A stretch of DNA of 64,000 bases from positions 5,403,978-5,467,977 of the forward strand of contig OZ199838.1 of assembly GCA_964304625.1 (NCBI GenBank), read 5' to 3'. Every line of letters begins with the position of its first letter. Within the stretch, counting starts at the first letter, position 1. The stretch is from Kudoa neothunni. Taxonomy: Eukaryota; Animalia; Cnidaria. A program made the position numbers and the translations under genes. Shown one piece after another: positions 19,290 to 64,000 of this stretch. A model generated the notes under the pieces. The model was not told the origin of the DNA and searched no databases. It worked only from the letters and a program-made list of their open reading frames with translations.

Positions 19290-21434
19290 ATGTCGGCTCC
19301 TCAGTTTCTTGCATTTGACGAATATGGTCGTCCTTATATTCTTGTAAGAGATCAAGAGAAAAAAAACCCGTTTGACCGGTATTGAGGCACAAAAAGTATA
19401 TTGGGTGTGGGGATTACTGTTGATTATTTGATTAGTCATACATTAACGTTGCAAAGAATGTTGCCAACAATCTCAGATCATCGCTCGGCCCAAAGGGTAG
19501 TTTTTTGATTTGAACAACGATTAGATTGAAGTTGGCCGGTTGATTGGTAGGTATGGACAAAATTTTGGTCAGTAGCGATGGGGATATAGTTATTTCAAAT
19601 GATGGTGCTACAATAATGAGTAATACTGATTTTGGGCATGAGATCGGTAAGCTCATGGTGGAATTGTCGCGCTCCCAAGACGACGAAATCGGTGATGGTA
19701 CCACTGGTGTTGTTGGTAATTCATTTGGATAACAATTACAATTTTTCCACTCCCAATTATGTTTTTATGTCAAATATTGTTAGCTTAATTATTTTTTTGT
19801 CAAATTTCGACTTAATAAAACTTTTTAAATCATGTTTCAAGAAATTAAAAATTTATTAATAATCACTAAATTTGATTGAATGATTGTGACCGTCATATTT
19901 TTCAGTGTTGGCTGGTGCTATGCTGGAGAATGCAGAAAAACTACTAAATATGAATATCCACTCGAGTAAAATTGCTTCTGGCTACAGTCGAGCGGCCGAG
20001 TTGGCATGTAAACAGTTGGATACAATTAGCGAGAAATTACCACCTATTCTTAATGACAAAGAACTGCTCATTGAAACTGCTATGACCACTCTTGGTTCAA
20101 AGATGTAAATAATTATTGTGTTGGTTTAACCTTGTTAAAAAATCTTTTCAGTTGATTTAATTGTTGTGTGCACGTACACAGTTAATTATGAATGACTTAT
20201 AATTTAGTAATGTTCGCATTCATATAAAACTATATCATAATAAATTTTTAAGACAATGGATGGGACTGCTCATAATAATTTTTTTATAGAGTGAGTAAAT
20301 GTAGAAGACAATTGGCTGAGATTGCTGTCGAAGCGGTTCTATCTGTGACTGACTTTGAGAGGAATGACGTCAATTTTGAGTTGATTAAAATTCACAAGAA
20401 GGAAGGTGGTAGACTAGAAGATACCACCCTAGTTAAAGGTGTCATCCTTGACAAGGAAATTAGTCACCCACAAATGCCGAAAACATTACAGGATGCAAAG
20501 ATTGCAATTCTTACTTGTCCTTTCGAACCACCAAAACCAAAAACCAAGCATCGTCTAGAAATCAGTTCGGTGGAAGATTTCAAAAAGTTGCGCCAATACG
20601 AAAAAGACACTTTCAACGATATGGTTAAAAAGGTCAAGGATTCGGGAGCAACTTTAGTCATTTGTCAATGGGGTTTTGATGATGAAGCTAATCATCTACT
20701 CTACCAAAATAATCTTCCAGCTATTAGATGGGTAGGTGGTCCAGAGATTGAGTTGATTGCCATCAGTACTGGTGGTAGAATTGTGCCAAGATTCTGTGAA
20801 TTGTCTCCTGAAAAATTAGGAAAGGCTACTTCGGTTCGTGAGGTTCCACTTGGCACCACTAAGGATCGTATGGTTTTCATTGAAGGATGCTCCAACTCTA
20901 AAGCTGTCACTATTTTCGTTCGTGGAAGCAATCGAATGGTGTTGGATGAGGCTGAACGTTCGCTTCATGATGCTATTTGTGTGATTCGTAATCTGGTGAG
21001 AGATGGACGCATTTTGTATGGTGGTGGTGCTCCAGAAATCGCCTGTTCCATAGCTATAAATAATTGCATCACTAAAGTTGATTCGATCAATCAATACACT
21101 TTCCAAGCTTTTGCCGATGCCCTGGAGTCGATTCCATCAGCTCTGGCTGAAAATTCAGGGTTGTCCCCCATTGAGACAGTGGCTGGAGTTAAAGCGCAGC
21201 AGATTGCCGATAGCAACTCCACCTATGGTATAGATTGTATGCGTACTGGTTCCAATGGTAATTTTTTCGGCCGTTTTGTGACACACTATTTAAAAACTCT
21301 GGTTAGATATGAAAAAACAACATGTCATTGAAACTCTACACGGTAAAAAACAGCAAATCCAGTTAGCTACCCAACTTGTAAGAATGATTCTACGCATTGA
21401 TGATATTCATCACAGCCAAGAAGAAACTGATTAG
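19290..21434 (+). CDS. CCT5: T-complex protein 1 subunit epsilon; six exons, one apparent +1 frameshift in exon 1
   Basis: [80 protein letters not shown] at 21432-21434 follows a last intron at about 21259-21306. Confidence 0.97.
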
Positions 21435-22331: not shown

Positions 22332-24179
22332 CCTTATAGTGTTAAATTGACTCATTTCAATGAATGTGATAAAAGAAATTAAAATTATTTATGGAAGTTA
22401 TTGAAATAGTAAAATCTATACAATTATATTAAAACATGTGAAAATCAAATTTATCTCGTTCTGATTAATACCTCTTGACTTAAAATAACAATTAGTGCGC
22501 TCATTCCAACAAATACTTGCACACATAATTATTCTATATGGGTTGGTGATATAATCTAATAAACAAATGATTTTAGTATATAAGGATGAATGTTAACTCC
22601 AATTGATGATCTCTTTGAAATAAGCAAACAATAATCCTATTACTGAAAATCTGGAATCCACTTAACCCCCTCGTAATGCGTGGAAAAAATCAGGCGTGTT
22701 CCGATAGGGACCGTTCGGACCCCAGAAAAAACTATCTTAATGATCTTTAATTTCTTTGTGGCATGCTTTTAACAATTTTTAAATTATTTATAAGATGTTC
22801 TTCATAGGAAATTAAATTAACTATGATGCGATAATAGGTTACAAAACTGGTCCCATGATGTATCAATATCGGCTATTTAAAATTAAGGAATAACTTAATG
22901 GTACAAAAATTAAAACTGAAAACATTTAATCTGAAAATAAAGTAGTCTGGAAAATGAAGAACATTATAAAAGAGGCAATCGCAAGTAAAATTGATCGGAG
23001 CGGATAGCAACAGCGGCAGCGTTATCGTATAAGATCGGAAACAACAATTTAACAATGAAAGGATTAGATTGAATAAAGGTGCCTTGGATCTAATGAGTAA
23101 TTTAACGTAATTTTTAGTGTATATAAAAGCTAACATTCAAATTAACTCTTGAAATTTGACGTATATATTCCTTTTTGTCAGACATAATTTGATGTTTGAA
23201 AACACTAGATATGTCGCGTTAGTTCTATGATGTAATCTTTAATTTTCTCTGTATTTCTCTGTTTTAAAGAATATGATCTTATAAGTTTAATAATAACAGA
23301 AATGGGTTTTCATGATTATAAAGTTAAGTGAAACGACCTAAAATCCCACGATTTTTGAAATTACATTATTAATTCTCTTTAAAAATTATTAAAATTAAGA
23401 AATTTTCAGAGCAATTACTGGCATCATTCTAATGGCAAGCTTATAATAACGGCTAGTAAATCCGAAATTAAGATATATTATTTTTGTATTTAGACTCGGT
23501 AATCCGCGGTGAAATTCTACGATATGCTAAGAATCATCATTTACTCAATTAAATATTACATCTTAAATATAAACCCTCAAATATACGAGGAAAATATATT
23601 TTCTCGGTATATATGTATTTTCTCTAAAATCAAAACATACTTTTGTAAAGGCACAAAAATCATTTCCCTCTGAGTCACACGAAAATTTACACTTCAAGTA
23701 AAAAAGGGGTAGAAATTTCCCCCAAATTCTGTTCCTGTAAAATTGGCTGAAATATAAAGTTATACAATCTCGAATAGTTTTAATAAATTCTATCGATTAG
23801 ATTTCGAGTAATTCAAGAAACATTATTATTAAGCCCCTCCGCGCTTGCGTAGAATCTAAAGTACTTGTTTTGGCTAAACTTCAGTATGCGTGTACAGACA
23901 TTAGAACAGCGCTTCCCAACTAAAACTGAACTCGCACCCCCATTTTTTGACAAAACGAAATTCGCACCTCTTTGCATACGATAAGGTGTAACTGACTTAA
24001 AATTTATCAAAAATTATTTTCAATTTTGATTGGATCTCGCACTACCCGAAACCAAAGTTCGCACCCCCTAAGGTGCGGGCGCCCCTACATTAGAAGGTAT
24101 AGTATATTCTCGGGAAATATTTGCGCCACGTTAAATTTTAAAAAGAAAGTTCACATTGAAAATATAGATACCATAATAA

Positions 24180-24960
24180 TACTTGATTATGGTTATTTTC
24201 GAGATGATATAAATTATACATTTGAAGCTATGATCAATACTGGACTTTCGAGGAGTTATCCTAAATGTTCTTGTGGCTCGATAATGAAAATGGTGTCAAG
24301 GAAGGACATTGGTGATGGTCATCAGTTTTGTTGCAAAATTTTCCGAAAGAGAAGCTGAATTAGAAAATATAATATTTTCGAACTATCAAAGCTTCCATTG
24401 TGGAAATACAACATCATGTCAATATCGCATCCTTTTCTATCAGAGCGGAATGGAAAAGTTTAATTCGAGATTTGATGGCTTCGAAATTGGATGAAGAACG
24501 CACAAAAATTGGAGGCGAGAACATTGTAGTTCAAATCAATGAGACTGTTGTCTCCAAAAGAAAATACAATGTGGGGAGAATTTTAAAGAACCAACAGTTC
24601 TGGTTAATTGGGGGAATAAACGAAAATGGTGACTGTTTTTAAAAATATCCCATTACAGGAATCAGAATGTTCTTGAGAACATAATAGTTGATAAAGTAGA
24701 AGAAGGATCCACAATATGGACTGACGGTTGGGCTGGATACAATAGGTTAGAAAGTTTAGGCTTCCTTCATGGAAGAGTTATCCATAAGCGACAGCTTGTT
24801 TCAGGTGAAGGAGTCCATACCAACCGATTGAGTCTATTTGGGGCGTTTTAAACGTAAATACAAAAACGCCACAAAAACCCCCGAAAAACCTTTCCTGATT
24901 GTATATCAGACTACCTTTTCGAAGGATGTATTACAAACGAGAATTAAGAATACTTTGTAG
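24180..24960 (+). pseudogene. Merlin (IS1016/ISXO2-like) transposase remnant inserted in the piggyBac
   Basis: KIGGENIVVQINETVVSKRKYNVGR, FWLIGGI, GSTIWTDGWAGYNRL and GVHTN, plus an N-terminal CxC motif; frameshifted. Confidence 0.85.
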
Positions 24961-25089: not shown

Positions 25090-26650
25090 ATAAATGTAAT
25101 ATTTACACCAAAATCAACAAATATAGTGAGAAAATGGTGTTATTTCTTGAAACATGCCAAAAATGTTTTTACAGCAAAACACAGAGCAAACGTCACATCT
25201 GTTGACAGTTTCTGTCATTGTTTCTTCCGCACAATCGACACCTTCCACTATTTCGGTTGTTTGGCCTAATCGCGCCTGTTCTTTGAATTTGTGGAACATT
25301 ATTCATATACTAAGAATTCTTAGAAATCAATAGGGTAATCATTTCTTCGGCCATTTTTTAACAAAATCTCTCCTCAGAAGATTCGTAGAATTAAATATTT
25401 CGTTATAAATGCAGAAATCATTGATCAACGAGATGTCTAACATATTGAAAAATACAAGTGGTCAACGTCTAGTGATCCTTTTTACAGCCAACGATGCCAA
25501 CATTCTCGCGATGGTATCAACTCCACCCTTGACTGAATTGTAATAAGTTATAACTTCTGACTTATGTGGTGATTCATCGGCTATGTTTGTATTTGATGAC
25601 GAAGAACAGAGCATATAAACAGGCTTGTTTTTCTTCGCCAAATATCGCAATATCATTTTTTTGTGGTTAAAAACAAAAAGAGAAGAATTCACGATGCTTG
25701 CTCTAGTGGATCTCAAATAAGGAGGAATCTCTCGTTTATTAGAGCGCATGGTTCCCACCATTGTAACTTTGTTGGTCAACAATTTATCCGCCAATTCTAC
25801 GGACGTACAAAAACTATCGCACACCAAATTTCGCCCCGAACCATGAAAGGGCTCTATCAAATGTAACACGATTTCTTTGCCTACATTTGTAGCGCTTACA
25901 GCTTCATCACCACGCTGTCCCAGATATACACATATATTGGATACATAAGTCGGTAGAGGATCCACTAGCAAGAAAAATTTTATTCGATACTTGGCGGGTC
26001 TCATGGGCATATATTGTTTGAATTTACAACGACCCCGAAAGGCAACAAGTTGCTCATCAATGCAAATATCCTCGTATGGGCGGAAACTTGAAGCAAGTAA
26101 ATCTATCCAAACTTCCCAAATCTCACATATATGACAGAATTTGTCCGTGGCCTTCCTTATTTCTCTTGTTTCTGTGCCATCGAAATGAGGGATAAGCATG
26201 ATTTGACGGAATCTATCGAGAGAAAACAAATCACGGTATATTTTTCTACACTCTTCAGGATTAAACAATTCTTTTAAGGGCTCTTGGTTATCTTTGTGAA
26301 CACCCATCAGCAACAAATAAACGATAAATGCGTCTAGTTCAATTTTGTCTAGTTGTATCCACGTATCACCATAAATGTAGGATCCAGATTGATTCGTGTA
26401 TTTTAAAATAAGTCGTACATTTGTTGATTGAAAGATGTCCGAAATGTATAGACCATTGAATTAATATTCTGTTTTATGAAGGAGGAAACGCCGAAACTAT
26501 TGTACAAAGTGTTTTCAGTTGATGTTCGAGGAGATACTGGAGCCTTAGTCTCCTATAATGCCCAATTCTTGTCAATAAGATTGTCGATTAGAAGATTTAT
26601 ATCAAAATCGCGTCTATCTAAAGATTCTTCATCCAGAAGGTCGTAATAAG
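25090..26650 (-). pseudogene. piggyBac (PGBD4-like) transposase pseudogene
   Basis: CIDEQLVAFRGRCKFKQYMPMRPAKY, RNLVCDSF, VGTMRSNKREIP, YNSVKGGVDT, RITRR*PLVFFNMLD and C-terminal RCDVCSVFCC. Confidence 0.9.
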
Positions 26651-28156: not shown

Positions 28157-31100
28157 ATGAAGGCAACATTTTTTTTAGTATTGCTATCCACAGTTTTCTT
28201 AAGGTATTTTCATGGAACAATATGTTTGTGTAGTCAGATTGTTGTTGTGGTTGACCGTTAATAAGAAACATATTTTTTTCTGTTTGTAGATTTACAATCG
28301 AAAAACTCACTCAAATGTGCCCAATGAATGTAGTCATTATGATGGATGACTCAAAATATGTCACCAATGAAAATTTTGCGCTTCAAATTGATTATGTTTA
28401 CCAACTTATAAATCATCTACTCACCAGTGGGGACAATGTTAAAGTGGGCCTTGTACAATATGGAATGTATCCTCGTCCCTTGATTGATATGAGAACTAAC
28501 GCAGCTACAAAACCAGAATATGCAGCACAGAAATTTGAAAGAATTGTTCGACTAAGTAAAATATAGGCAGTGTCGTCAACCAAACCAACAAATGAATCTT
28601 CTAATTGATTTAGATGGCAGAAACTGTATAACCTCGGCACTTGATAAAGTCTCATGGTCATATTTTATAAGAGGAATCCATTCTTTCCCATTCGAAAGAA
28701 ACGTATCACTTTTTAAAAAATTAAAATATATAGAGGTCTATTTATTATTCGATAACTTATTACTAGGTTATTATTCTTATCGCCAATCATCCCGAAGAAT
28801 GCGCTTCAGAAAAATCACTTCAATACACCATAGAATCTTTAAAAAGGAAAGGCATTATCGTCGCAGTTATTTCAGTGGAGTCGACTCAAAGAAATAAAGA
28901 AAACCTCTTGACTGCTAGCAACAAAGAACTCATATTTTTCTCAAAAACCTTTAAAGAAGTGCACAAACAATTCGACAATGTCATCAAAGGAGTTTGTTCT
29001 TTCCGTAATACAATAAAATTTCTCCAAAAGATGATTTTTTGATTTTTTTATTAAACAGCCGCAAAAGATATTATGGGGAATGAAATTCCTCTCAAACTAC
29101 ATAGCAAAAATCCAAATCAACCATCGACTCCCTATGACAACAATATTTTCCCATCAGAAACGGCTGGCTTAGGTAATTATCTAATGTGTTATTTTTGTTC
29201 ATAGTTATTTAGGTGATTTCTTCACATCAGAAATATTTTACATTAACATTTTCTTTTAGATAGCTCTTCAAGAAATCCTTCAAGTAATTAATTCTAACTA
29301 TTTTCTTCTTGTATTTTTTAAAATTTTTGTAGGTTCATCAGTTCCTGAACTAGGTATTAATATATATCTTACAAAACTATTCTCAATTTGCTTTTATTTA
29401 AAAATAGGACCGGTTCCATTACCAGGTAATTTTTTTTCCAACTGAAATTTATCTAAAATTTACTCAAGCTGAACCAGGCTCTCCTGGTAATTTATTATAT
29501 TTCATTATCGCTTTATATTCATATTATTCGAATTAAAGAACCCTCACTACAGCCAGGTAATTCAACAATTTATAAATAACAGTATAAATTGGCTATTAAA
29601 TTATAGGTTCAGTTCCACTTTCATGTATTCCATCTTATTCGTTACATAATTAAATTAATATAAAATTTCAAAGCCGACCCTAGCTCTCCAAGTATCTTAT
29701 TAATTTTTAGTTTTGGTTAATTATTATATTTGTTGGATTAAAGATCCTTCACCTCAACCAGGTATGTTCAAATATTAGTTCACATAATAAACGTTTTTAT
29801 TAAAAAATGAAGGACCAATCCCATTACCAAGTATTTAGTTTTTCATATCAATAACTAAATAAATATAAATTTTAAAAGACGACCCAAGCTCTCCTAGTAA
29901 TTTGTTATAATTTTGAAAAATGTATTATTTTATTTGTTTGAACTAAAGACTCCTCACCTCAACCAGGTAATTATAATGCTTGTGAATAAAATAAAATCTT
30001 GTTATTCAATTTATAGGACAAGTTCCTCTGCCAAGTATCTCACTCTCTACATAAATAACAAAATTAATATTATTCTCAAAAAGACAATCCTAGCTCTCCA
30101 AGTATCTTATTAATTTTTAATTTTGGTTAATTATTATATTTGTTGGATTAAAGATCCTTCATCTCAACCAGGTATGTTCAAATATTAGTTCACATAATAA
30201 ACGTTTTTATTAAAAAATGAAGGACCAATCCCATTACCAAGTATTTAGTTTTTCATATCAATAACTAAATAAATATAAATTTTAAAAGACGACCCAAGCT
30301 CTCCTAGTAATTTGTTATAATTTTGAAAAATGTATTATTTTATTTGTTTGAACTAAAGACTCCTCACCTCAACCAGGTAATTATAATGCTTGTGAATAAA
30401 ATAAAATCTTGTTATTCAATTTATAGGACAAGTTCCTCTGCCAAGTATCTCACTCTCTACATAAATAACAAAATTAATATTATTCTCAAAAAGACAATCC
30501 TAGCTCTCCAAGTATCTTATTAATTTTTAATTTTGGTTAATTATTATATTTGTTGGATTAAAGATCCTTCACCTCAGCCAGGTATACTCCTATATTAGTT
30601 CACATAATAAACGTTTTTATTAAAAAATAAAGGACCAGGTCCTTCATCAAGTAACTACATGAAATAATCGTATATATTATGAATATTTATTTACAGGACC
30701 AAACCCATATGATTCTGGTATCTATGACGAATTTTGGTTAAGGTATGGTTTGTACTAAATTTTTGTAGGTTCGGTAAAAGGCGGAAATGTCGGTAACTTA
30801 CTGAACATATTCTTTAATAAAATAAATTTGTGTTGGAAAAGATCCAACTAAAGGTGGTGGCGGCGGAATCAGTAGTTTAACAAACCAGTATTTGTTTTAT
30901 GTATTAACTTCAATTTAGAGGGATCAAGCAATGACAGTAATAATAGTTTGCTATTCTGAATGATTTCATCTTCTATAATTAAAATATTACTAAAGGTTTC
31001 GGCGGAAGTAACGTTATTCGTTTTTATTTGGTATTATGTATAATTTAGATAATCTTGATGATGCACTCGAAGGTTTATTATCCTAACAGAACTATTATTT

Positions 31101-31943
31101 TTATATCTTATTTTAGATGTTTCCAACGGTAGATCAATATTATTTTAGTTTGTGTAAAAGAGTTTAAAGAAATAAGCGGAGGGGGTGATCCGAGTGGCTC
31201 CAATGCATTGGATGATCTAGCAAACAGTGGAAATTACGATGTTACAACCGAAAAATTCAAAGACGACGACAAAATTTCGATAACCCATTTCATTAAGAAG
31301 AAAGGAGATAAAGATGGACCCAGTAATTAACATTTTTTTATGATCTGTGTTATTTCATTAGTATTTATAAGTCTAAAATACGAATAGTAATATTTAAATT
31401 AAACCTAATGTAAATTTTATCGTTTTAACTATTTTGATTGGAGTTGGAACGAGTTGTAAATAAAATACAAAATTTAGAAGTACCATTACTCAGCAACACA
31501 ATTGTCATCATCCCAAAAGGTAGCACTAGTTGTAAACGATGCAAGTTAACATCGAAAATTAAGATTGCTCCAAACGAACTTTCAAACAATTGGGATGTTC
31601 TTCAGCTACATTGTTTAAACGTCATTTGATAGAAGTCAACCAACCTTTCAATGAAGATACCATCCAACAAAAATTATGTGCGTGCTCGAAGGCAGCTGAA
31701 AATGCTAATGCCCTTATGTTTGGACTTGGAAAAAACGGTAATCAGGATCATTAACAAAATATCGTTAACATATACAAATTAGATGGTTGTTACATGATCA
31801 AAAAACAAAATGTATACGACATGATAAAAAGAAACGTGGTTGAATGTGGGTATGGGGTTTCAAAGAAGTGCGTCATATCCGACGCTAATTCTTCTTGTGA
31901 TAACAAACATTCCCATATGGAGTTTTACTCATTTGATAACTAA
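28157..31943 (+). CDS. Secreted protein: signal peptide, vWA domain, micro-exon-encoded Pro/Ser then Gly-rich linker, Cys-rich C-terminal domain (about 37 exons)
   Basis: Exon 1 encodes MKATFFLVLLSTVFLR. The vWA region reads CPMNVVIMMDDSKYVTNENF ... VKVGLVQYG ... VIILIA ... LKRKGIIVAVISV ... GVC. About 28 phase-1 micro-exons follow at 29260-31128. Exons 31170-31322, 31478-31519, 31564-31737 and 31783-31943 give DCSKRTFKQLGCS...KLCACSKAAENANALMFGLGKNDGCY...EFYSFDN*. The whole path is open using GT-AG introns. Confidence 0.85.
29678..30640 (+). repeat. 410-bp near-perfect tandem duplication (about 2.3 copies) of six micro-exon/intron units
   Basis: Sequence at position n recurs at n+410; the identical ORF calls 29913-30113 and 30323-30523 reflect this. 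An older periodicity of about 205 bp (three exons) underlies it. Confidence 0.95.
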
Positions 31944-32328: not shown

Positions 32329-34924
32329 ATAACCCTTTCGTGTTCAATGTTCATTTGAATATTAAATGAACGAGAGAACAAATTGCACCTCTGTGGCGCT
32401 CTATTTTGATTTTCTTCAAAATAGTTTTAGAACGTTTTAATGATTTTTATTAGTTAAAAAATAATTCTGCCGAAATATAAAACGAGAATACATGCTACAA
32501 ACAAATTGAAATTTATTTTTATGCATAATCGTAACATATTCCATTAAGAATTTTTCTTAAAATATATTTTTGCGTAATCTAAAAATATTTATATATATAT
32601 TATAAAGGTTGAAAAATTAATTTAACAAAATTACACAGGAATTATTGTTGTGTATTATTTAAAAAATCATTATTGTCGTTATTTATAATTACCTGATATA
32701 TCTGTTTCACTCGAAAAAATACGAATGCTACAACTCAATCTATTGTACCTCTTTTTAAAAGCATTAGTTTTAAATATTATTAGGTATAGAACAGTTTAGA
32801 AAATTAGATGTGGACATCAAAATTGGCGCTCATGCACAAAAAATCGACCGTTATAAACATATTGATTATATGAAACCATTGTTTACAAATCTGTTCAAAT
32901 ATAATTTTTCAATGCATTTTAAATATAGCATGAAATATTTACATGTTCATGATACGTACAAGTAAGATTTATACTTAATTGTTATTTTTCCCGTAATCTG
33001 AGGATAATGTCTGATAAAAATTATTTTGATTATTTTAACACTTTACATCGGTTTAAGTTATAACTGGCGGCTATAATTTTCGACGACTATTTTTAAAAAA
33101 TTCGACGTTTATTTTAATACCTGGCGCATGCGTGTCACAGAACTTTATTATCATGCTCAACGTCAGTGATATAAACATAAATACAGTAGGTGACGGGTCG
33201 TTGGCATTAAAATGGGAATTGGGTTCGAGGTGCCCTCGAGCCGTCATGACACACGCGAACAATGCAAAATTTTAATGTAGGCTCTTGCAATTTAATCTCT
33301 CTTATTTGTCACTATGTTTGTATTTATATTAAAAAATATATTTAATAAAAATAAATTTTCTTATAACAATGACTTAGAGGTTAAATGCGATTAATCTAGT
33401 CCATCCTTGACTTTAATATGCGGAAACAATCCGTTTAGTCAACGTGATGATAATACTAATGATTTCTGTCAACAATAATTTAAAAAAAAATAAATGCAAC
33501 TTACACGTCCAATTTTATCACAATCATTTTTTATTTTAATCTTAAGGTTTGGACGATTTTGAATAAAAATATGCAGAAAACTTTCTCAATGAATTATTAT
33601 ATCTTAAGAAAGTATTGCGTAACAAATAAATTATTTTCTGTACTCAAGAGAAATAGGAGTAAGAGTTAGTAATCAACATAAATTCAATATATATATTGAT
33701 ATGCATAAATTTCATAAAATTAATTAATATACTCAATAAAATATAACTAAAAGTTTTTATAGTACTTATTAGCCGGATTTTACTCTGAAAAAGTTATTAA
33801 TATTTTACTGATAAAACTCCGACATTCGTGAATCGTAAATCGTCGTTTCTAGATCTATGACCTTAGATAACATTTGATAATTTAGTTTTCTGAAACATTT
33901 TTACATTTTTCTCAAATAAATTAAAGCATCATTCATAGAAATAGTAAATTTTTTAAAGTTTTTGGGGTTATTTATAATTTTTATCCCATCATGAAGTCTT
34001 ATAATAGATTCTTTATTACCCTAAATCTTATTTAAGAGGATAGAGATTTTAAGTTAAGATAATTAAGGATCTTAGTTCTTCTATTTTTCGCATTCGATAT
34101 TCATTCATAATCTAACATTATACCCACTTTATCTTTCAACGAATGAAACTGCTTGGTTCTCTTCAAGTCCCCACAACCCATCATTTGGGCAACTTCATTC
34201 TTAAGCTTAATGCTCACGAGTCGTGAATTTGAGCTAATTCTTATTTACAGCGAATTAAAACAAAAACTAAGGTTTTAATAATTTATCATAATTGTTATGC
34301 TTTTATTCGATTCATTTTAATTAGTAACAATACTGTGTAAGTCATTAAATCGTAACAGGTGCGCACGAGTCGTCATCTACTGTATAATTTTTTTATAAAA
34401 TTTTCCTTTAGAATATAATATTTCAAGCATTCTCATTCGTTCAAACGCAAAATTTACTTTAGAAATTTTGAGAACCTTATTTCCACGACTGTGGGTGATA
34501 GATGGATATGCACCAAATCTTGGCCAGCCCAAGACAATATGAAATAATTTGATTAATTTATTTTCTAAAATCCAGGACCTATTATTTCATCATTTCTATG
34601 GTGTGAAAGTTCCAGCAACTCTTGTCGTGGAATTTCTCGTTGATCGACGTTAACAAATGTTGATATATTTTTTTGGTCGATTTCCTGATTTAAATCTGTT
34701 TATTCGGTTACATAATTGTCAATTAGTCTTTTTTTCTGTCCATAGTAAAACGAAAAATAATCGACGAATTGTCTCGGTTTTAACTGAAGAGTGTAAAAAT
34801 ACTTTTAAAATTCCACGTTTATCGATTTTAATCGAAAATTACGACTTCTAGTTATAACTAACCTTTTTTCAGCAGTATATTATATTCAGACCGCAAACAA
34901 CAAATTTCGGCATGAAAAGGTTAA
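32329..34924. mobile_element. Degenerate non-autonomous piggyBac-type element
   Basis: ataa-ccctttcgtg ... catgaaaagg-ttaa ends; no recognisable ORF. Confidence 0.5.
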
Positions 34925-35205
34925 CAACGATCGAAAAATTTAAAAATTATTCTACTGAAAAATAAATTTTTGGCATTTCGAACACTACAAATGCACCAAT
35001 ATAATTATTTGGTAAATGCTTATTATTACTTAACTCTTTTGCTCGCACAAGAGTTACGCATACCCAGACTTGACTGTATATATGACCAAACAATCAATCG
35101 ATTTAATTCAACAGATTTTTTTAAATGTTTTAAAAAAATTTATTTTAATAATCAAAATGCCAACAAAACGACATTGAAGAATTTAATCGAATCAATTCAG
35201 CTAAG

Positions 35206-38200
35206 TTAACTAAAGAATATAATTGGGTTGCCAGGCGAGCATTGTTCTTTAATGTTATCGTTAGAAGCAGTACCAATATCAACAACCTCTATGGAGGCCA
35301 CCTAAAAACCAAATTTAATAAACTTCAAACCCAGAAAAACCATATACCGAGAGAGATTTTATGAGATAGGGAAGTATTTCATTAAGAATTTGTTTCTCAT
35401 TGAACGATGTAGTCAGATTCAATGCATCGGGTCCTTCGGTTTGTTCGCAAGTCTAAAAATAATAACACCGTCAAAACTACACATTCCCCACAATTAAACA
35501 CCTTAATATACTGCACAAATGACATGACTTTATTCATTTGTTTGGAGCTGATACATTTAAGTATAGGGTCTTTTTTAATGTGAGCAACCAACTGTTTGTT
35601 ATCGGGGAAGCTGGTGGCAGAATTAGCTGCTTCATTATCAGTACGGTTGGACTGGATATGGTTGGTATGATAAAAATCGGCTAAAAATTCGATGATTTGA
35701 GTTTGCCAGTCGTTATATTTGTCAGTGGTGTAGATGATAGCTCGTTGAGCTTCTTTTTTATTTTTTAGACGAGCCCTAAAATTTCTGCTGGTAGTTTCAA
35801 TAAATCTCGATATATGAAGAAGATTGTGGTCGTATTTGGTGATAGCAGGCCAGCTTGCATTCATAATAGAGTCGCAGTTTTTGAGTTCATTTTTCAGTGA
35901 AAGCACTTCACGAAGTAGAGAGAAAATATATTCACAAATGTGAGGGCAGATTGGGGCAAGAACAATAGTTTGAATGTAAATAAAATGAATTAGCAGATTA
36001 ATATTTTCTTCGATTCCACTTTTGCTACAATATTCTCTATAAAGATCTTTTGAGTTTTGAAGTTGGTAGAAACCGCATTTAAGTGCCTCACGATAAAGCA
36101 TGGACTTATAGTTGTCATACGATTTAACAACAGCGTAGTTGATATCATTTTCAAAAAGCTTTTCGAAAATGTTAGTAAATGGCTCACATTTTGTTGGACA
36201 TTTTTTTGCGGTTTCGATAATTTCTTTTGACCACTCTAAAAACGTGTACAACCGAAGAACAGTGTTATCTGCGATTTTTTCAACAAAATTGGCATCTTCA
36301 ATAGTATCACCAGAATCAGCTAGAGTTAATCTCACCGCATCTGCACCGTATCTACCTATAGCCTCATCTAGCGTGAGAAAATTGCCAGTAGATTTTGACA
36401 TTTTTTCCGAATTCAACAATAGATGACCATTAGCACGCACACCTTTCGGCCATTTTGTCATATCCTCCGGCCAAATCGCAACATGATTGTAGAGATAATA
36501 TGTCAAATGGTTGGGAATGAGATCCTTTCCGGAAACTCTCAAGTCAACACCATACCAATATTGAAACTCATTTCGTAGTTTGTTGAGTTTGCTTTGATCG
36601 ATAGTACAATTTGTGGTGGGATAGGGCATATCTTTAAGAAATATATAATCCCAAACTTCGTTGGTGAGTTGATCAGCCGTGATACCGAGAGCATTGGCAT
36701 TCGAACCATCCAAAGTGTTTCCCTGGAGTAGGTGAGCAATAGTATAATAGCTCATATAAATGGTGGAATCAGACAACGATTCCACGAGATAGACTGGATC
36801 CCAAGGGAGTTTTGTGCCGAGACCAAAAGAACGGGCACAAGCATGCTCATGCAACCAGTATAATACTGCAAGGAAATTGTTTTTGGTTTCATCACAGTAG
36901 GTTTCCATTTGTTCAAGGCATTTGGTAGCTTTTGATTTCCACTCATTTTCACCATAATTAAGATACCACTGATCACACAATGCAACCACACATTCATCAC
37001 CCGATCTGGATATAATTCGTGATTCTGGTTCTTGATAAATTAAACAGTGACCTTCGTCTAGCATCTGCTTTTGTATGAGAGGTTTAGCATCTTTGACAAG
37101 CATATTTTTGTATCGGTTGGAGAAAACTATTTTCCCTTCGTAGAATGAACTTTTGTAAATGGTATCTTTGGCAGTGACCAATTTGTCGGTATCGTTTTGA
37201 CTCTGTATTTTGAGTTTTTCACATATCATCTTCGCACATAACTCTCCATAATCAGGAACCGATATAATTTGAACTGGTTCAAACAGCATACTCTCGTCCA
37301 CGCCAAATTTATCACGCAACGCTGGTTTGTTTTTGAGATCCACCAATGTGGCATAATCATCAGGCGAATCCGATGGAACTGACATCACAATTCCAGTACC
37401 TTTGTCTTGTTTGATTGTAAGCATAGGTAGTGCATATATTTGTTGATAATGAGCACAAGATGGAGTACTTATTTTGCTGCCGAACAACAAAGATCCCTTT
37501 ATTTCTCCTACAACGTTGTACTTTCCGATCATATCAGTAAGATTTTGATAAGACGCATTCCTGGCTGCTCTCCTAGTACTAACGTAATACACCTCATCAC
37601 CCTCACAACTTCTGTAAACCACATAATCAATATCTGGATGAAGCCAGCAGTTAGTAATCCCAAAAATGGTTTCAGGTCTTAGCGTTGCAGCCAGCAGAAA
37701 TACTTTTTTATTTTGAATCAGTTCATTGAGCAAAGAGTGCTGCTGGTGGTTAGCAAGTAAAGGAGCTTCACACAGACGAAGTTTGAAAACGGTATATTCT
37801 TGAGGACCGATCCCTTCGCCGCTAGCGCGATCATGATCCATACAGGGTTGGTTATCCTTTGGCGAAAAAATGGTGTAACGTTTTCCAAACTTGACAAATC
37901 CTAACTGTTTTAACTTCCAAAATTGCCATCGTACAAATGAGTCATAGAATGGATTGACGTCTGTGGTGATAAACGACCTCCTCCAATCGACCTACCAAAA
38001 TAAGAGATCATTATTTATTTCAGCTTCATTTAACTCACTTTTAAACCAAACTGTTTAAGATCGCTCATTGCGCATTTTGGGAAATATTTCAACCAATGCA
38101 ATGGATCAACAAATTTTCTTATTTCCTCATCATTCAATCCAAAACTTTTCATGATATTCCACTGATAATTTGCAGTACCTCCTTTGGCTGCAACTTTGCT

Positions 38201-41200
38201 CTTAACCTATCACATACAGTTAATAATTATGGAATGTAAACTGCTATAATCTATAATCACTTTGGTACCAGATGCTGGATTGTATGTAGGATCAACCACC
38301 TGTGCTGGGAACGTAGGAGGAAATCCAAACGTTTCCAATTCGTATTTTAATTTGTCCGCACATGCCTATTAGAAAACATAAAAGTTTATTCCCATAAACA
38401 TCTGTAATATTTTAATACGTCCAAATAATAACTCTAATAAATAAAGCTTCAAATTTATTCAGTTACAATGAGATTATAAAGGTAGACACACTAATCCCCC
38501 AAGGCAGAGCTTCTTAGGCGAGGATGTGAAAATTCGTTATGATTACTTAATACATAGGAAAGTTTCGAAATCAATCGAACCTTTCTCATTTCGCTAACTG
38601 CAATACATGCATCATTTTAAAGTTTTCTTCCTAAAGCATAGGCTAATAATTAGCATTTAATAGAATTAATCATAAATATTATTTATTCATTAATTTTTTT
38701 ATTATAAATAAACGCTGGAATAAGTACAATTACATTATTTGCTAAATATTAACAGATTGTAGGTAATATTTTCCGACACAACTAGTTTCTACAATATAAT
38801 CTAAAAATTAAGTAAATATACGTATACACCGTATTTATTCTAGCGTAACGCGCATCCCAATTTTGAATTCTATTTTAGCTAGAAAACTTTGGGTGTTAGA
38901 CTCAAATAAATGCGGTGATCGATAAAAAAATAAGGACAAATATCGAACATAGAACGCCATAATTATCAATGACGAGACTTACCCAATATAAATAAATAAT
39001 TTTGGATTGATTTTGAAGTTTTTCTAATTTCAATTTTTTTAAAGGCCGCCCAAATTAATCCTCTACGTACTGCGAACGAAAAAATTATCCACGTTTTAAC
39101 TTCTCCAAACACCGAATAAATTAAAAAAGTTAACCATATTTATTAATATATGCTAAATTTTGAAAGATATTTCAGTTTCCTTAATGTGTAAACGGCATTA
39201 CTGGCAGTGCAATGACGTAAAACTGTGTGAATATAAAAATAATCCAATGGCCCCAATTTTATCTAAATCAACGATTTCACTGATCTTGCATTGTAAATAA
39301 GCTTTGGGGATATCATTGAAAAAGAAAATATGATTGTTTACATGCGTCCCTGGACTGTATGTACTTTTTGGATAGAAAGCGACTATTTTGAATGGTATAA
39401 AATATTCGGGTGCCGCTATTTTTGACTATACTTAATATTTTATGGCCCCTAAGAACGAAACGGTGGGTCAGAAAGAATTGAATACAGCGGAGTTTACAAA
39501 ATTTAAGCTAAATACAGACTGTAAGTAAGAGTTGTTGAATTAAAAATTAACATCGCGTACGCGCGATGTCAATAGAATTAAAATTCTCGTACCAATAGCC
39601 TCTGCCGTAACATAAACACATGAGAACATATGATTCCTTGGTTAGAATAAACTATTCTCAATCATAAAATTTAATCAAAAGGAGATGACGTTATTAACAT
39701 AATTAGCTAAACGCTCAACTAATAAAAGAGTCTATTCCATATTTATCTGACCTTAACCTTAATGCGGTGTATTTACTGAAAATGAACTTTGCTTTAAATC
39801 TTAAGTATTTTTCTCTAATGAAGGGTTTTTATAGTATGGAAACAATTTGGCGATATAGAAACGCACATATTTTATAACACGAAGAAACTGGTAGACTTTA
39901 ATTAAATCTTTCGTAATTATCTTGTGGTAACTTCATCAAAATGCAGCGATCAAGATCATGATGTTAAAATATCTGCAAAAAATCTTTACGGAAATGTCCC
40001 CTTTCCCCCATTACGACTAAACAACGTTTTTAAAGCCCCTTCCTTATTTTTATGGATAGCAATTTAGAGAAGATTATTAAATTATGGTTAAATTTAACAA
40101 TAATTCTTCTACGCAATTTTGCAATAAAATTCGATAAAAAATTATAGTATTAAATATTTCGTCATGACTCTCCCTAAACAATTTCAAAATATTCACTTAT
40201 TTTTTTAAACATGCATGAAAAAAGCTGTAAACTTATAGATCTCGAATTCGTCATATCTATACCGGGTTTTGCGCCCAATTTCGGATTGCGCGACGATCAA
40301 ATTCGGATATTTTTGCGCCCGTTAGTAAACAGTGAAAACAAAAATGGTTTGATACGTGAAACACTCGAATGAAACAAGGAAGAGAGTGATTAAACTAGTT
40401 ATAAAACAGGGAAGATCACAAAAAGAGGTTGCAGAAGATCTAGATGTTCCAAAATCAACTGTGAACGATATCGTTGAAAGATTTCTAGCGAGAGATCCTT
40501 TTGAAAATTTGCCGCGAGGTGGAGCTCAAAGAGTTATTTTTAACGAAGAAATCAAGAGAAAATTGTTGGACTTGATTAACGATGATTGCACCTTAACTCT
40601 TGCATCGATGATTGAAAAATTATCATTAAATGTCAATCCCGCGACTGTCTCAAGATGGTTGACATCCATGAACATAACATTTAAAATGATAAGAACGATA
40701 CCGCTGAGTAGAAATTCCCATGATGTAAAGTTGGAGAGAAAAAAGTATGCTGAATGGTATACCCAACTTTCCATTACCACAAGATACGAAAATCTTATTT
40801 TTGTAGATGTAAGTCCCTTTTCCCTCTGAATGTTAAGAAACCACGGCAGGTCCTTAAGAGGCTCCACCCCTAATGCAGTAGTTCCGAGCAGCCGAAGAAA
40901 TAATGCCACAATGATATTGGCCATTAGCGGAAAAGGTCTTATCCATTGCGAGGCTATTTTTGGGTCAGTGAGCATTGAAATTTTTCAATCATTTTTAAAA
41001 AAGATAGAGGAAGCGATGGATAATATGAGATTCTATCATTCCAATGTTGAATTTTACGACACATTTTCTGGAGAAATACAGTATCTTCCAAGATATTCAC
41101 CATTTCTCAACCCTTGCGAAGAGGTATTCTCCTTAATTAAATCAAGAGTAAGAAGAAGTGATCCAATTAGAGGAAGAAATGATTTAATTGATAGAATGGA

Positions 41201-42495
41201 CAGTTCTGCTTCCTCGGTCACTGGATGTGAAATTATAAAATTTTTTGAACATTCGGAAACCTTTTTAGGTAAATGCCACTTAATGGAAGATGTGGCGCGA
41301 GATTGAAATATGCAACTAGTTATCTACGTGGCAGTAATCATAAAATTTTACATTTTAAACATTTGTTTTTATGCAGCGCTAAAATATCCGAATTTGATTG
41401 TCACCAATCCGAAATTGGGCGCAAAACCCGGTAGTAAACTCATAGAAAGATTTGGATTATATAAGCATCAAATAATTTCGTACTTATTTAACAAAATGAC
41501 AACATTTATGTCCATATAATTATTTGAAGATTCAAACTGACAATCTTTTAATAATTAGATAATGGATGATATTTGTCATAAAGTCACTCATTATTCTTAA
41601 TTTCTAGTGATTATTATGAGTCGTCTTATTCTTATCATAGAAGGATGGCATCCAATTAAAAAAAGAATAAAACGGAATTGAATATTAGAGTTTGATATGT
41701 AATAAGGATGAACTGCGTCGGAGTGAAAACCTACCTGAAATATTTTTCGGATAGTATTTAATTTTAATATTTCCCATTTACTTTTACAACTCCAAAAATT
41801 TATTAATCATACTTATCATAGATTTACAACAATAACTAAAACTCCAGCTGTTTAAAACAATGTAAAATCATAAAGCAGAGTTAACATTTTAAGGTAAAAA
41901 ACACTAAAAACTTTAGAGGGTTAAAATTAAATTTTATTTATTTTTATAACTATTAAAAAACTCTCAGTAAATTATTTCAATACCTTGATCGGCATGCCTG
42001 TGGCATGAAATCCAAATGGAAACAAACAATTTTTACCCCGAAGACGTTCAAATCCAACCGCAAATTCACACTATGATCGCGATATTAAAAACAAACTTCG
42101 AACTACATTACCTTAGTCAGTGAAAAACTGTGCCCTATGTGTAAACGCCCATTCATATATGGATATGGGAATGTTGCCATAAATTTATTCCTGCCGTAAA
42201 AAAATAAAACCATAAATGAATCACGCAGTTTGAATAATTTAAATACTTTTTTTCGCAAGCTTCGGTGGGAGCATCCACCTCAAATATTTTCTCTTCAGCC
42301 CATTTGCTCTGCATTCGGTCCTCAATGTTACGTAATATGTCAAGTTTGACATACGATTTTTTATCCAAATCTTCCATCTGTTAACAAAAATAATATAAAA
42401 TGTCATATATTCACTATGCTGCTTACTCTATTTTTGTAGCACAATTGACGAAATGATCCACGAGCAAATAAACTTTTGAGCAGACTTGTGCGCAT
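35206..42495 (-). CDS. LARS1: Leucyl-tRNA synthetase, cytosolic (eukaryal/archaeal) type; core starts at ATG 42377, putative upstream coding exon 42427-42495
   Basis: [15 protein letters not shown] (HIGH motif), [31 protein letters not shown], editing domain ATLRPET...[20 protein letters not shown], and C-terminus [14 protein letters not shown] 3.6-kb intron lies at about 38367-41983. Confidence 0.97.
38827..38917. mobile_element. Short Tc/mariner-type hairpin MITE in the LARS intron
   Basis: caccgtatttatt ... aaataaatgcggtg inverted ends. Confidence 0.5.
40262..41431 (+). mobile_element. Tc1/IS630-like transposon in the LARS intron; transposase about 40344-41306 with two in-frame TGA
   Basis: TA flanks; perfect 27-bp TIR ccgggttttgcgcccaatttcggattg, extending imperfectly to about 57 bp. 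HTH ([16 protein letters not shown]), IFVD, MDN and [16 protein letters not shown] motifs. Confidence 0.95.
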
Positions 42496-58213: not shown

Positions 58214-60611
58214 TCTTCTATATATAAAAGCCTAAGTGACCGTGTGTGTGTCAGCAAGTACGCATATGCAACAAATTTTTTCCTTATAAATAGATACAGT
58301 ATTTCACGATTAAACTGCAAGTCGATCGCATCAATTTGTAAGTTCAATTTTAAACTTCTATTTTCTTATCTTCCTATAGATGAAGGTTAAAAATATTAAA
58401 AATTATATTAGAGAAATTATTATTACTTCACATAAATTAATTTATTTGATAATTTTGGAAAGTTAAATAAATTTTCTTAGTTAGGCCAAACAAACAGAGA
58501 AATAGCTGAAGCTGTTATAACACATGAAAGTACTATTGTTAGAATAATTAAAAAGTATCATTCAACTGAGAGTTGTGCTCGAATCAAGAAGGGTGGTAAT
58601 CGACCATCAAAATTAATAGACGACCGTATAGATCATACAACAAAATTAATGACCGATGACTGTACGATATCACTTAAAGCTGTTTTTGAAAAATTTAGTA
58701 TTGTTGTATCTAAATAGTGTGTGAATAAAAAATAAGCGATTTTAATTACCTTCTGAAATGTACTTCTGTGGTACCCCGAGTTAGGAATAGCGCCGAAAAT
58801 ATCAACAAAAAATATGAGTGAAAGTTACCATTTAAAACAGTTCTATAATTTGTATAGATACGTAGTGGAATTATTGAGGCTTAAAGAAGAACACGAAGAA
58901 ATAATATTGTTTGATGAGGTTGGATTTTCCTTGTCAATGGGACGCAAGTTAAGCAGATCAGCCTGTGGAACACGAACTAATCCATGAATGAGATCTATTC
59001 GTTCTAAGAATGTGACTCTTATTGTCGCGATAAGTCCAAAATATTATGGACATTTAACATCGAGCACGGAAGTGTGAACACACTAGTTTTTATAAATTTT
59101 ATTTTGGATCTTTTAAAAGATTTACGTGAGAATAATATATCAAAGGTTCTCATAATAATGGGTAATGTTCCCTTCTATAAATCAACAATTATCCAAGATT
59201 CTATATTTGGGGAGGGACATACTATTTTATTTTTGCCCCCATGCTCACCATTCTTAAATCCAATTGATAATTTATTCCATCAATGTAAGTCTATCTTCCG
59301 TCTGTCAAATCCAAAAAATCAAAATGAATTGGAACAATGTATGATTGAAGCAACTGAGAGGATTACCGCGAATAATTTAAAAAATTATTACCAGAATTCA
59401 AAGAAATGCCGTGAAAAGTGTCTTAGATAACAAATAATTGAAAACTAATTTAAATAATATATTTATAATTAAAATATTCATTTTTTACTATTCTTGTTGA
59501 GAACAATTAATAACATTTATTTGTTTATCTACTTATTTGTTTGTTTGTTTATTTATTTATTTATTTATTTTGCCGATGCGTGAGCAGCGGACAGATTTTG
59601 AATAAATTGAATTGGAGGTTTTTCTCAGCGCATATAAATTCAATATTAGAGAAAAAATCCTAACAATTCTTGCAATTTGATCGTGAAATATAGTATTTAT
59701 ATAACTTTTAATAGTTTACGATAATTTAACAATTATTTCATTTGTTATTACATAGACAGAAGTTCAAAAATAATGTGGGAAATTGTGTTGTCCTCGGTGT
59801 TAGGTCTGTTCAGCGGATTATGTGGTTTCAATAATAGGATTATATTTGTTTAATCATGGCAACATTTATCTGTATTAAACTTCTGCAAGACATTAAGAAT
59901 GTTTTTAGTGGTTTAAATTTAAGTTCTATATCCATGCTTTCAAGATACATCTTATATCCTTCATCTCTCTCTCTCTCTGTATATATATATGGTGTGTCCG
60001 TTTGGATGTGTTCTTAAATACACTCCTTATTTTTGGAACTTTTGTTATATTTGAATTGATAAGTACAGTTCAAAAATTCTATAGAATGCATTTAATTTAG
60101 CAAATTTATATAAATTTGCTAAATTAATGAAGAATTTGAAGCATATGTTTTAATCAGATGGATTCAATCCCTACATACTGAAACTAGGTCCCCAAATTTC
60201 GTTAAACCGCCCGTTACACTTAATTTTAAGCAATAAGATTTAATGTACAGATTGAAATTATACATTTTCTAATTATTTAAAATATTTTTGTTTATATTTA
60301 GGGATTACATAGTTGTTTTGAGGAAAGAGTGAATGAAAATGTGCAGGATAAAGAGATATTAATTTGAGAAATAAAAAATAATCGCGCAAGTTATCACCGA
60401 GTTATACAGTTATTGCCATTTTTATGATCTCCAAAATATGATCTTAATTTTAACTGCGCTTTTCACGGTCGTTAAAAATATGGATTTAAAAAACAAGGTT
60501 AATTTAACTTCTCTGAATTAATGGAAAGAATTCATATTTTTCTTTATTTTTTATACATGTTTTACGACAAAATATTTCCAATCCCGTGCGAAGCTGGGCA
60601 GTTTGCGCTAG
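58214..60611 (+). mobile_element. Non-autonomous Helitron (5' tip probably split by the hAT insertion)
   Basis: 5' end TCTTCTATATATAAAAGCCTAAGTG. 3' GC-rich hairpin-like cccgtgcgaagctggg (60583-60598), then CTAG followed by T. Confidence 0.75.
58297..59693 (+). mobile_element. Degenerate Tc1/IS630-like transposon inside the Helitron
   Basis: TA flanks; TIRs cagtatttcacgattaaactgcaag ... cttgcaatttgatcgtgaaatatag; fragments LFDEVGF and IIMGNVPFYKS...FLPPCSPFLNPIDNLF. Confidence 0.88.
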
Positions 60612-63089: not shown

Positions 63090-64000
63090 TAGGGTTTGCA
63101 ATTTTCGACGTTTATTTTATGAATAAAAGAAAAATAAGTTTTTATCAGAGACTAAAAAAACAAAGTTTTATAGAATAAAAATAATTATTTTGAGTAACTA
63201 CTAGTTAAAATAGAGATGGACCGTTAAAATGGAGCATCGAAACCAGTGAAGCGCGTTCATTTGAGAGTTTCATTCGTTCTTTTCGAATTATATAATTTGA
63301 TTTCGTAAAGCTTCGTTCTACAGCGATAGATGAAATGGGTAATGCCAACAAATCCAACGAAAGTTTTGACAGCAATGGGCAAATATTGGATTTTTCCTTC
63401 CAAAAGTCTGTAGTGATAGAAGGATGATTTAAATCCATAATTGCCTTACAAAGGAAATTGTATTCATCTTTAAGGATAACTTTGTCTTTAACCCCTATTA
63501 AATAACAAAGATCATCAATATGTACATTTTCAATCGATAATGGCGTTGCTGGATCAATGCTTTTGATTGTTTTAAAGAAAGTGGCTGATGGAAAACAATC
63601 ATTAATACTATTTGATATAAAATCATAGATTTTCTCGATGATGCTCCCGCGAAAAGGTTCAATTTTATTGATAAGATTTGTTCTAATTTCAAATGAAAAA
63701 AGTCCAAGATTATCTTTGTGATCATTCAGAAAATTCTTCTTCATTCCAAAATCATTATTCATCGAGTCGAATATACTTGAAAAACAAAAACTATCGTTAG
63801 TTTCAATACGTTTCGAAAATTCAACCAGCGGCGTAAGTTCATCAATTAACACAGTGACAGAGAGAAATAAGACATTGATATTCTCAGAATTAATTAGTAG
63901 AATTTCATTTAGACGTTTTCCAAATTCTAAGGGTTTAACTTCATTTAGAAAATCGACAACAGCTGGATAATATTCTTTTATTTGCTTTAAGCAATTGTAA
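63090..64000 (-). mobile_element. hAT transposon 3' part; transposase C-terminal ORF 63205-63852
   Basis: DFWK...CPLLSKLSLDLLALPISSIAVERSFT...RKERMKLS is the hAT dimerisation domain; TAGGGTTTGC end at 63090. Confidence 0.88.

What the first reader, a model, noticed from the sequence alone, without database searches (positions are those of the whole stretch)
29260..31128. Micro-exon array: about 28 symmetric phase-1 exons (19 consecutive 18-mers) encode the linker of a secreted vWA protein
Seen: AG-exon-GT units separated by introns of about 41-59 nt. Exon starts are 29260 (24 nt) and 29333 (21), then 18-nt exons at 29408, 29469, 29539, 29607, 29674, 29744, 29813, 29879, 29949, 30017, 30084, 30154, 30223, 30289, 30359, 30427, 30494, 30564 and 30633, then 30697 (21), 30769 (24), 30842 (30), 30919 (18), 30996 (12), 31049 (24) and 31117 (12). 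Every length is a multiple of 3 and all are phase 1. They spell GPVPLP-AEPGSP-EPSLQP-GSVPLS-SDPSSP-NPSPQP-GPIPLP-NDPSSP... Known: this architecture defines schistosome micro-exon genes, whose secreted products are diversified by exon skipping. Inference: this is an independent system that tunes the length and sequence of a stiff, potentially O-glycosylated stalk between two folded domains. ORF finders cannot see it.
Basis: partly seen in the sequence, partly recalled or inferred. Interest (0 to 1): 0.93.

Follow-up and report, generated by a model that had tools for sequence, protein, structure and literature searches.

The report
Micro-exon-built linker in fish-parasite protein
A fish parasite related to jellyfish (very probably Kudoa neothunni) builds the proline-rich spacer of one secreted protein from 28 tiny exons, a layout known from schistosome micro-exon genes; the exons look real, but nothing yet shows that they are skipped to make variant proteins.

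Summary
Observation confirmed. All 28 AG-exon-GT units exist, all phase 1 and multiples of 3; chance gives chains of at most 4. They lie in a 37-exon, 603-aa open model: signal peptide, vWA domain, Pro/Ser linker, Cys-rich C-terminal domain. The 18-mers fall into three classes repeating in order, grown by DNA duplication of exon-plus-intron blocks (205, then 410 nt). They diverge mainly at third codon positions (pN/pS 0.42), so they are translated and purified rather than diversifying. The genome is most likely Kudoa neothunni, whose median intron (49 nt) matches these introns. An ortholog confirms the vWA exons. A paralog with the same C-terminal domain encodes its linker in one exon. No RNA of this organism was reachable, so skipping is untested; it is the rarest splicing mode in Kudoa iwatai (4%). 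Best reading: a mostly constitutive spacer whose length changes by DNA duplication. The layout is known (schistosome MEGs, SmVAL6; Tb-MEG1 in a myxozoan), so this is a new variant. The scan had not found this array on other DNA; it has unchecked notes on other micro-exon runs in this genome.

The parts
28157..28203 (+). Exon 1 (ATG; hydrophobic N-terminal segment, probable signal peptide). An alternative first exon inside the 86-nt intron 1 is possible.
   Evidence: only hydrophobic 19-mer window is at residue 1; ortholog L020 has a phase-2 intron at the same place
28290..28555 (+). Exon 2, N-terminal half of vWA domain; MIDAS motif degenerate (DDSKY for DxSxS)
   Evidence: Pfam PF00092 E 9.5e-9; 30% identical to ortholog; best PDB hits collagen VI, factor B
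28614..28702 (+). Exon 3, vWA middle
   Evidence: same boundaries in ortholog L020
28767..29004 (+). Exon 4, C-terminal half of vWA domain
   Evidence: Pfam PF00092 positions 107-172, E 0.019; 40% identical to ortholog over 42 aa
29059..29172 (+). Exon 5 (114 nt, symmetric phase 1), start of linker
29173..29259 (+). 87-nt intron that divides at an internal AG|GT into 40 + 47 nt (zero-length exon, recursive site, or relic of a lost micro-exon)
   Evidence: unresolved
29260..29353 (+). Micro-exons 1-2 (24 and 21 nt), Ser-rich
29408..30650 (+). Nineteen 18-nt phase-1 micro-exons in three classes (GxxPLP / xDPSSP / xPSPQP) in strict order: an 18-aa repeat
29646..30637 (+). Tandem DNA repeat: 205-nt unit (3 exons + 3 introns) x4.8 at ~70%, with a recent 410-nt doubling x2.3 at 98% (2 differences in 410 between the full copies)
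   Evidence: depth doubling in X1
30697..31128 (+). Seven further phase-1 micro-exons (21, 24, 30, 18, 12, 24, 12 nt), Gly/Asn/Asp-rich
31170..31322 (+). Exon 34 (153 nt, symmetric phase 1), end of linker
31478..31519 (+). Exon 35 (42 nt, symmetric phase 1); least certain exon, after a 155-nt intron
31564..31737 (+). Exon 36, first part of Cys-rich C-terminal domain
   Evidence: aligns with the paralog at G000:C1:2634795-2634983, 22% identity, four Cys kept, E 0.008 pairwise, same phase-1 intron positions
31783..31943 (+). Exon 37, rest of Cys-rich domain and stop; no membrane anchor
   Evidence: no significant BLAST match to the paralog's last exon

Best explanation
A single-copy myxozoan gene for a secreted matrix or adhesion protein: vWA domain, ~270-residue disordered Pro/Ser linker, Cys-rich domain. 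Shown: 28 splice-site-bounded symmetric units, an open frame, coding-type divergence, growth by tandem DNA duplication. Inferred: in a genome whose introns are ~50 nt and are probably recognised across the intron, an 18-nt exon is no obstacle; once two same-phase introns flanked a short piece of linker, unequal crossing-over could copy exon-plus-intron blocks without breaking the frame (a ~68-nt unit diversified into three classes, the 205-nt triplet was repeated, then a 410-nt sextet was doubled very recently). The exons are mostly all included, giving an 18-aa-periodic polyproline-II-like, probably O-glycosylated spacer; its length changes mainly between alleles and species at the DNA level, with at most minor skipping. 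Likely place of work: spore or polar-capsule matrix or parasite surface coat (vWA and WSC-type proteins are in myxozoan polar-capsule proteomes).
For: Splice sites, phase and open 603-aa frame. Chain of 28 against null maximum 4. Changes among same-class exons: codon position 2 = 5, position 3 = 16, permutation p 0.002; pN/pS 0.42 in the predicted frame, 2.95 with stops in a control frame. Repeat hierarchy and read-depth doubling. Ortholog with the same four first exon boundaries. Paralog with vWA domains, a Pro/Thr/Ser repeat linker in ONE 1.2-kb exon and the same C-terminal domain. K. neothunni median intron 49 nt (PMC12239612). K. iwatai: intron retention 29.5%, exon skipping 4.1% of events (PMC8056827). 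Skipping goes with long flanking introns in most eukaryotes, with exceptions (PMC6142364). vWA and WSC domains in Ceratonova polar capsules (PMC5566210).
Against: No transcript was seen, so inclusion level is unknown. Symmetric 3n exons are exactly what skipping needs, and 427 of 435 skip junctions stay open. Some small-intron genomes do skip short exons (B. natans). The ortholog's contig ends before the linker, so the age of the array is unknown. The pN/pS figure rests on 14 related sequences inside one gene. Location and glycosylation are inferred only.
Confidence: 0.6

Rival explanations
1. MEG-style system: the micro-exons are skipped combinatorially, producing a family of secreted isoforms that differ in linker length and sequence (spacer tuning as in titin PEVK or troponin T, or antigen variation as proposed for schistosome MEGs).
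For: 28 consecutive symmetric exons; 427 of 435 skip junctions open; secreted protein of a parasite; SmVAL6, with a like layout, gave 35 isoforms in 67 clones (PMC2270263); Tb-MEG1 shows micro-exon genes at the myxozoan surface.
Against: No RNA evidence. Exons are near-identical, so skipping would change length but hardly sequence. Purifying pattern, whereas schistosome MEGs have raised dN/dS (PMC4350168). Introns are short, skipping is rare in Kudoa. Symmetry is already required by the duplication mechanism. Paralog does without micro-exons.
Confidence: 0.28
2. The array is used all-or-none or in blocks (for example a long and a short form, or whole 3-exon units), or retained introns truncate the protein to a free vWA domain.
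For: Exon 5 and exon 34 are both phase 1, so skipping the whole array keeps the frame. 25 of 27 retained introns carry an in-frame stop and one more shifts the frame; retention is the commonest event in K. iwatai.
Against: No RNA evidence; a 2-kb intron would be 40 times the genome's median.
Confidence: 0.08
3. The array is a minisatellite inside a long intron, or an assembly artefact, and is not translated.
For: It is a tandem repeat; the assembly is low-coverage (PMC12239612).
Against: Every one of 28 units, including nine non-repeated ones, keeps AG/GT and frame; third-position bias p 0.002; short reads confirm sequence and copy number.
Confidence: 0.04

Closest known systems
Schistosoma mansoni SmVAL6 (folded SCP/TAPS domain plus micro-exon tail; PMC2270263)
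   Same: Composite gene: folded domain on ordinary exons, then a long run of same-phase tiny exons; 38 exons with 17 under 20 bp, against 37 exons with 22 under 20 nt here.
   Different: SmVAL6 has no signal peptide, spans ~60 kb with long introns, the run is C-terminal, and skipping is shown. Here the gene is 3.8 kb, the run lies between two domains, is a periodic repeat, and skipping is untested. No sequence relation.
Flatworm micro-exon genes (MEGs; PMC4350168, PMC4671649, PMC7653826)
   Same: Signal peptide in a longer 5' exon; central run of symmetric exons under 36 nt; Thr/Ser/Pro-rich disordered product, predicted O-glycosylated in MEG-4, -8, -15.
   Different: MEG products are ~10 kDa, mostly micro-exon-encoded, lack known domains, form families and evolve fast. 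Here micro-exons give 29% of a 603-aa protein with a vWA domain, single copy, purifying.
Tb-MEG1 of the myxozoan Tetracapsuloides bryosalmonae (cited in PMC7923790, PMC8481699)
   Same: Micro-exon gene in a myxozoan, product at the parasite surface.
   Different: Only review-level descriptions were reachable; its sequence and exon map could not be compared, so homology is unknown.
Troponin T N-terminal exons 4-8 (PMC2447309) and titin PEVK / tropoelastin (own knowledge)
   Same: Low-complexity segment built from many short same-phase exons that arose by duplication.
   Different: Vertebrate genes with long introns and shown regulated skipping; unrelated proteins.
Paralog in the same genome (G000:C1:~2634500-2642000, minus strand)
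   Same: vWA domain(s), Pro/Thr/Ser repeat linker, same Cys-rich C-terminal domain with the same two intron positions.
   Different: About five vWA domains; linker (about ten 13-aa repeats) lies in a single exon.

Membership tests
MEG, operational definition (PMC7653826) | At least 7 exons; exons under 70 nt and divisible by 3 make up at least half; run of at least 4 | tested here: met
   37 exons, 29 (78%) qualify, run of 28; predicted model only
Schistosome MEG (DeMarco type) | Most of the coding region is made of very small symmetric exons | tested here: not met
   528 of 1812 nt = 29% (definition)
Schistosome MEG (DeMarco type) | Signal peptide; secreted or membrane-anchored | tested here: met
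   Single hydrophobic segment at the N-terminus, no anchor; hydropathy only, no SignalP
Schistosome MEG (DeMarco type) | Isoform pool made by exon skipping | tested here: inconclusive
   RNA runs X5-X7 hold no read of this organism
Schistosome MEG (DeMarco type) | Small product without known domains; accelerated evolution | tested here: not met
   603 aa with vWA; pN/pS 0.42 among exon copies
vWA domain (PF00092) | Match above the Pfam cut-off | tested here: met
   36.2 bits vs 23.8 for exon 2; exon 4 matches the other half weakly
vWA domain (PF00092) | Intact MIDAS motif (DxSxS...T...D) | tested here: not met
   DDSKY here, SSSQS in the ortholog; last Asp replaced by Asn
WSC domain (PF01822) | Profile match of the C-terminal Cys-rich domain | tested here: not met
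   No Pfam hit for either exon or the paralog; PF01822 does not ring at this locus; fold prediction unusable, pLDDT 37. The WSC-like resemblance is from memory only.
Homolog of Tb-MEG1 | Sequence similarity | not testable with these tools

The most novel reading that the evidence does not exclude
A cnidarian parasite has independently evolved a working MEG-type system in a tiny-intron genome: regulated skipping of 18-nt exons sets the distance between a vWA domain and a Cys-rich domain in 6-residue steps, on top of ongoing growth of the array by DNA duplication.
Probability: 0.25. Interest if true: 0.7.

Novelty: new variant of a known kind. Interest (0 to 1): 0.45.

Why it matters
It is an unusually clean, still-growing example of how a micro-exon run arises: 68-, 205- and 410-nt exon-plus-intron duplications can be read directly, and a paralog with an intronless linker is a built-in control. 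That makes a standing question testable with one RT-PCR: are MEG-like arrays selected for skipping, or are they a by-product of frame-preserving duplication? It also shows a kind of gene that homology-guided annotation of myxozoan genomes would probably miss, and a candidate secreted antigen of a tuna parasite. If skipping is absent it remains a curious gene structure rather than a new system.

Tried and rejected
RNA test: three 2026 metatranscriptome runs with the same host label gave 0 reads on 6 kb, including neighbouring DNA: no test. Close paralogs: none for exon 2 or exon 36. Protein searches for more homologs: nothing beyond P0195; ESM Atlas blank. Fold of the paralog's C-terminal domain: low confidence, not searched further. 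Sphaerospora molnari as source: similar size but 40 contigs and 7 chromosomes, less fitting than K. neothunni. No paper with 'myxozoa' and 'microexon'; three reviews with 'micro-exon'. The Vasa copy I fetched (L031) has no micro-exon run; the one named in note s1-687431 was not reached.

Full report
1. The observation. Exons are GC-rich islands (0.33-0.61) in introns of 0.12-0.29 GC. A chain finder that knew nothing of the list found the same 28-unit run and nothing longer than 4 in about 197 kb of this genome; shuffled controls reach 3-4. A genome-wide pattern for three successive 18-nt exons hits this locus only; the same test for 15, 21 and 24 nt gave only satellites. Short-read contigs from DNA run X1 agree with the assembly on both sides of the repeat and show twice the depth over the 410-nt unit, so the copy number is not an assembly slip. 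X1 is probably the same animal, so it checks the technique, not the population.

2. The organism. The genome has 40.26 Mb in 4 contigs; the window's CCT5 is about 70% identical to animals of all kinds with no close relative. Earlier notes of this scan named Kudoa neothunni. The paper on that assembly gives 40.2 Mb, three chromosomes, N50 12.0 Mb, GC 30.4%, median intron 49 nt (PMC12239612), which fits contigs of 17.2 and 11.0 Mb and the window's GC. I did not test this by sequence. So the introns in the array are of ordinary size for this genome; only the exons are small.

3. The gene. Extending the frame gives 37 exons and 603 codons without an internal stop: a hydrophobic N-terminus (the only such segment), a vWA domain on exons 2-4 (PF00092; collagen VI and factor B as nearest solved structures) with a degenerate metal site, a linker of about 270 residues (the micro-exon part is 27% Pro, 22% Ser), and a C-terminal domain with eight Cys. 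Two independent sequences support the ends. First, a DNA contig from another sample (L020, found through P0195) encodes an ortholog, 30-40% identical, with introns at the same three places in the signal/vWA region; it stops before the linker. Second, a paralog on the same chromosome has about five vWA domains, a Pro/Thr/Ser repeat linker and a C-terminal Cys-rich domain that aligns with exon 36 (four Cys kept, pairwise E 0.008) and has phase-1 introns at the same two places. Its linker is one exon of about 1.2 kb. The family architecture therefore does not need micro-exons. The Cys pattern recalls cnidarian WSC-like modules, but that is memory; Pfam, the Atlas and folding did not confirm it. 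Exon 35 and the choice of exon 1 are the least certain parts.

4. How the array was built. The 19 18-mers belong to three classes in strict order, giving an 18-residue repeat; same-class exons are 56-100% identical, different classes mostly 11-60%. Tandem Repeats Finder sees a 205-nt unit (three exons with their introns) 4.8 times at about 70% and a 410-nt unit 2.3 times at 98%; the two full 410-nt copies differ at 2 sites, one of which (30162) reads as C in the short-read contig. Introns were copied with the exons, so growth was by DNA-level tandem duplication. Such duplication keeps the frame only if exons are symmetric, so symmetry is explained without skipping.

5. Are they translated? Among the 14 distinct 18-mers, changes within a class fall 11, 5 and 16 on codon positions 1, 2 and 3 (permutation p 0.002), and pN/pS is 0.42 in the predicted frame, against 0.57 and 2.95 (with stops) in the other two. 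This is the pattern of protein-coding sequence under purifying selection. The sample is small and the sequences are related.

6. Are they skipped? Unknown. The RNA runs offered hold no read of this organism. For: 427 of 435 skip junctions stay open, and SmVAL6, the closest precedent, is heavily skipped (PMC2270263). Against: copies are nearly identical, so little sequence variety would result; selection is purifying, whereas schistosome MEGs show raised dN/dS (PMC4350168); the gene is single; skipping is 4.1% of splicing events in K. iwatai against 29.5% for intron retention (PMC8056827); skipping usually goes with long flanking introns, though small-intron exceptions exist (PMC6142364). I put mostly constitutive use at 0.6 and a functional ladder at about 0.28.

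7. Function (inferred). A secreted two-headed protein with a stiff, probably glycosylated spacer, binding matrix or host surface through a vWA domain without a metal site and a Cys-rich domain. vWA and WSC-type proteins occur in the polar-capsule proteome of Ceratonova shasta (PMC5566210), so spore or capsule matrix is a reasonable guess; nothing here tests it.

8. Comparison. The gene meets the operational MEG rule used for tapeworms (29 of 37 exons, run of 28; PMC7653826) but not the original one (micro-exons give 29% of the coding length), so it is MEG-like in layout, not a member of a schistosome MEG family. SmVAL6 is the nearest design. A micro-exon gene is already reported from a myxozoan (Tb-MEG1). 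I found no paper describing this gene or such arrays in Kudoa. What is new is the position between two domains, the periodic three-class structure with readable duplication history, and the tiny-intron setting.

9. Limits and rules followed. The spliced model was searched exon by exon by reference; the joined step was left out of all searches and folds, so full-length homologs may exist unseen. 

Verdict: real feature, new variant of a known kind, interest 0.45.

Noticed in passing
L027/L028 = G000:C1:~2634500-2642000, minus strand: Paralog: about five vWA domains, about ten 13-aa Pro/Thr repeats in one exon, same C-terminal Cys-rich domain and intron positions.
   Followed up: partly
window 29173-29259: 87-nt intron splits at an internal AG|GT into 40 + 47 nt; the 18 nt after the AG resemble an array exon without a donor. 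Recursive site or decayed micro-exon.
   Followed up: partly
window 31323-31477: 155-nt intron, three times the usual size; only one stop-free in-frame inner exon is possible (9 nt at 31362-31370, weak donor).
   Followed up: partly
window 30162: Assembly has T, the double-depth short-read contig has C: possible consensus error or allele (Ser vs Pro).
   Followed up: partly
window 28204-28289: 86-nt first intron holds an alternative ATG exon whose length is closer to the ortholog's first exon but whose donor is weaker.
   Followed up: no
window 33000-34900: High, uneven depth with many variants in DNA run X1: dispersed repeats or small non-autonomous elements.
   Followed up: no
window 19300-21400 (+) and 35200-37841 (-): CCT5 (TCP-1 epsilon) and cytosolic leucyl-tRNA synthetase, each with one very long exon; ordinary housekeeping neighbours.
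   Followed up: partly
window 24026-24642, 25462-26316, 40356-41306, 59074-59430, 63205-63852: Transposase-like remnants (by resemblance: ISXO2/Merlin-like, piggyBac, IS630/Tc1 twice, hAT); not tested.
   Followed up: no
L029 = G000:C3:9131000-9140999, minus strand: Another multi-vWA gene with strikingly Arg/Lys-rich, basic domains; no micro-exon run.
   Followed up: no
L031 = G000:C3:3770629-3774168: A Vasa-like helicase with a short N-terminus on one long exon, so not the micro-exon Vasa noted by another reader.
   Followed up: partly
L034/L035 and L039/L040 (C2); also C3:8391533/8419620 and C1:8514938/8582172: Pairs of DEAD-box loci with identical scores 19-72 kb apart: recent segmental duplications or uncollapsed haplotypes.
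   Followed up: no
G000:C2:4394434-4394673: A canonical WSC domain (PF01822, E 6e-19) elsewhere in the genome.
   Followed up: no
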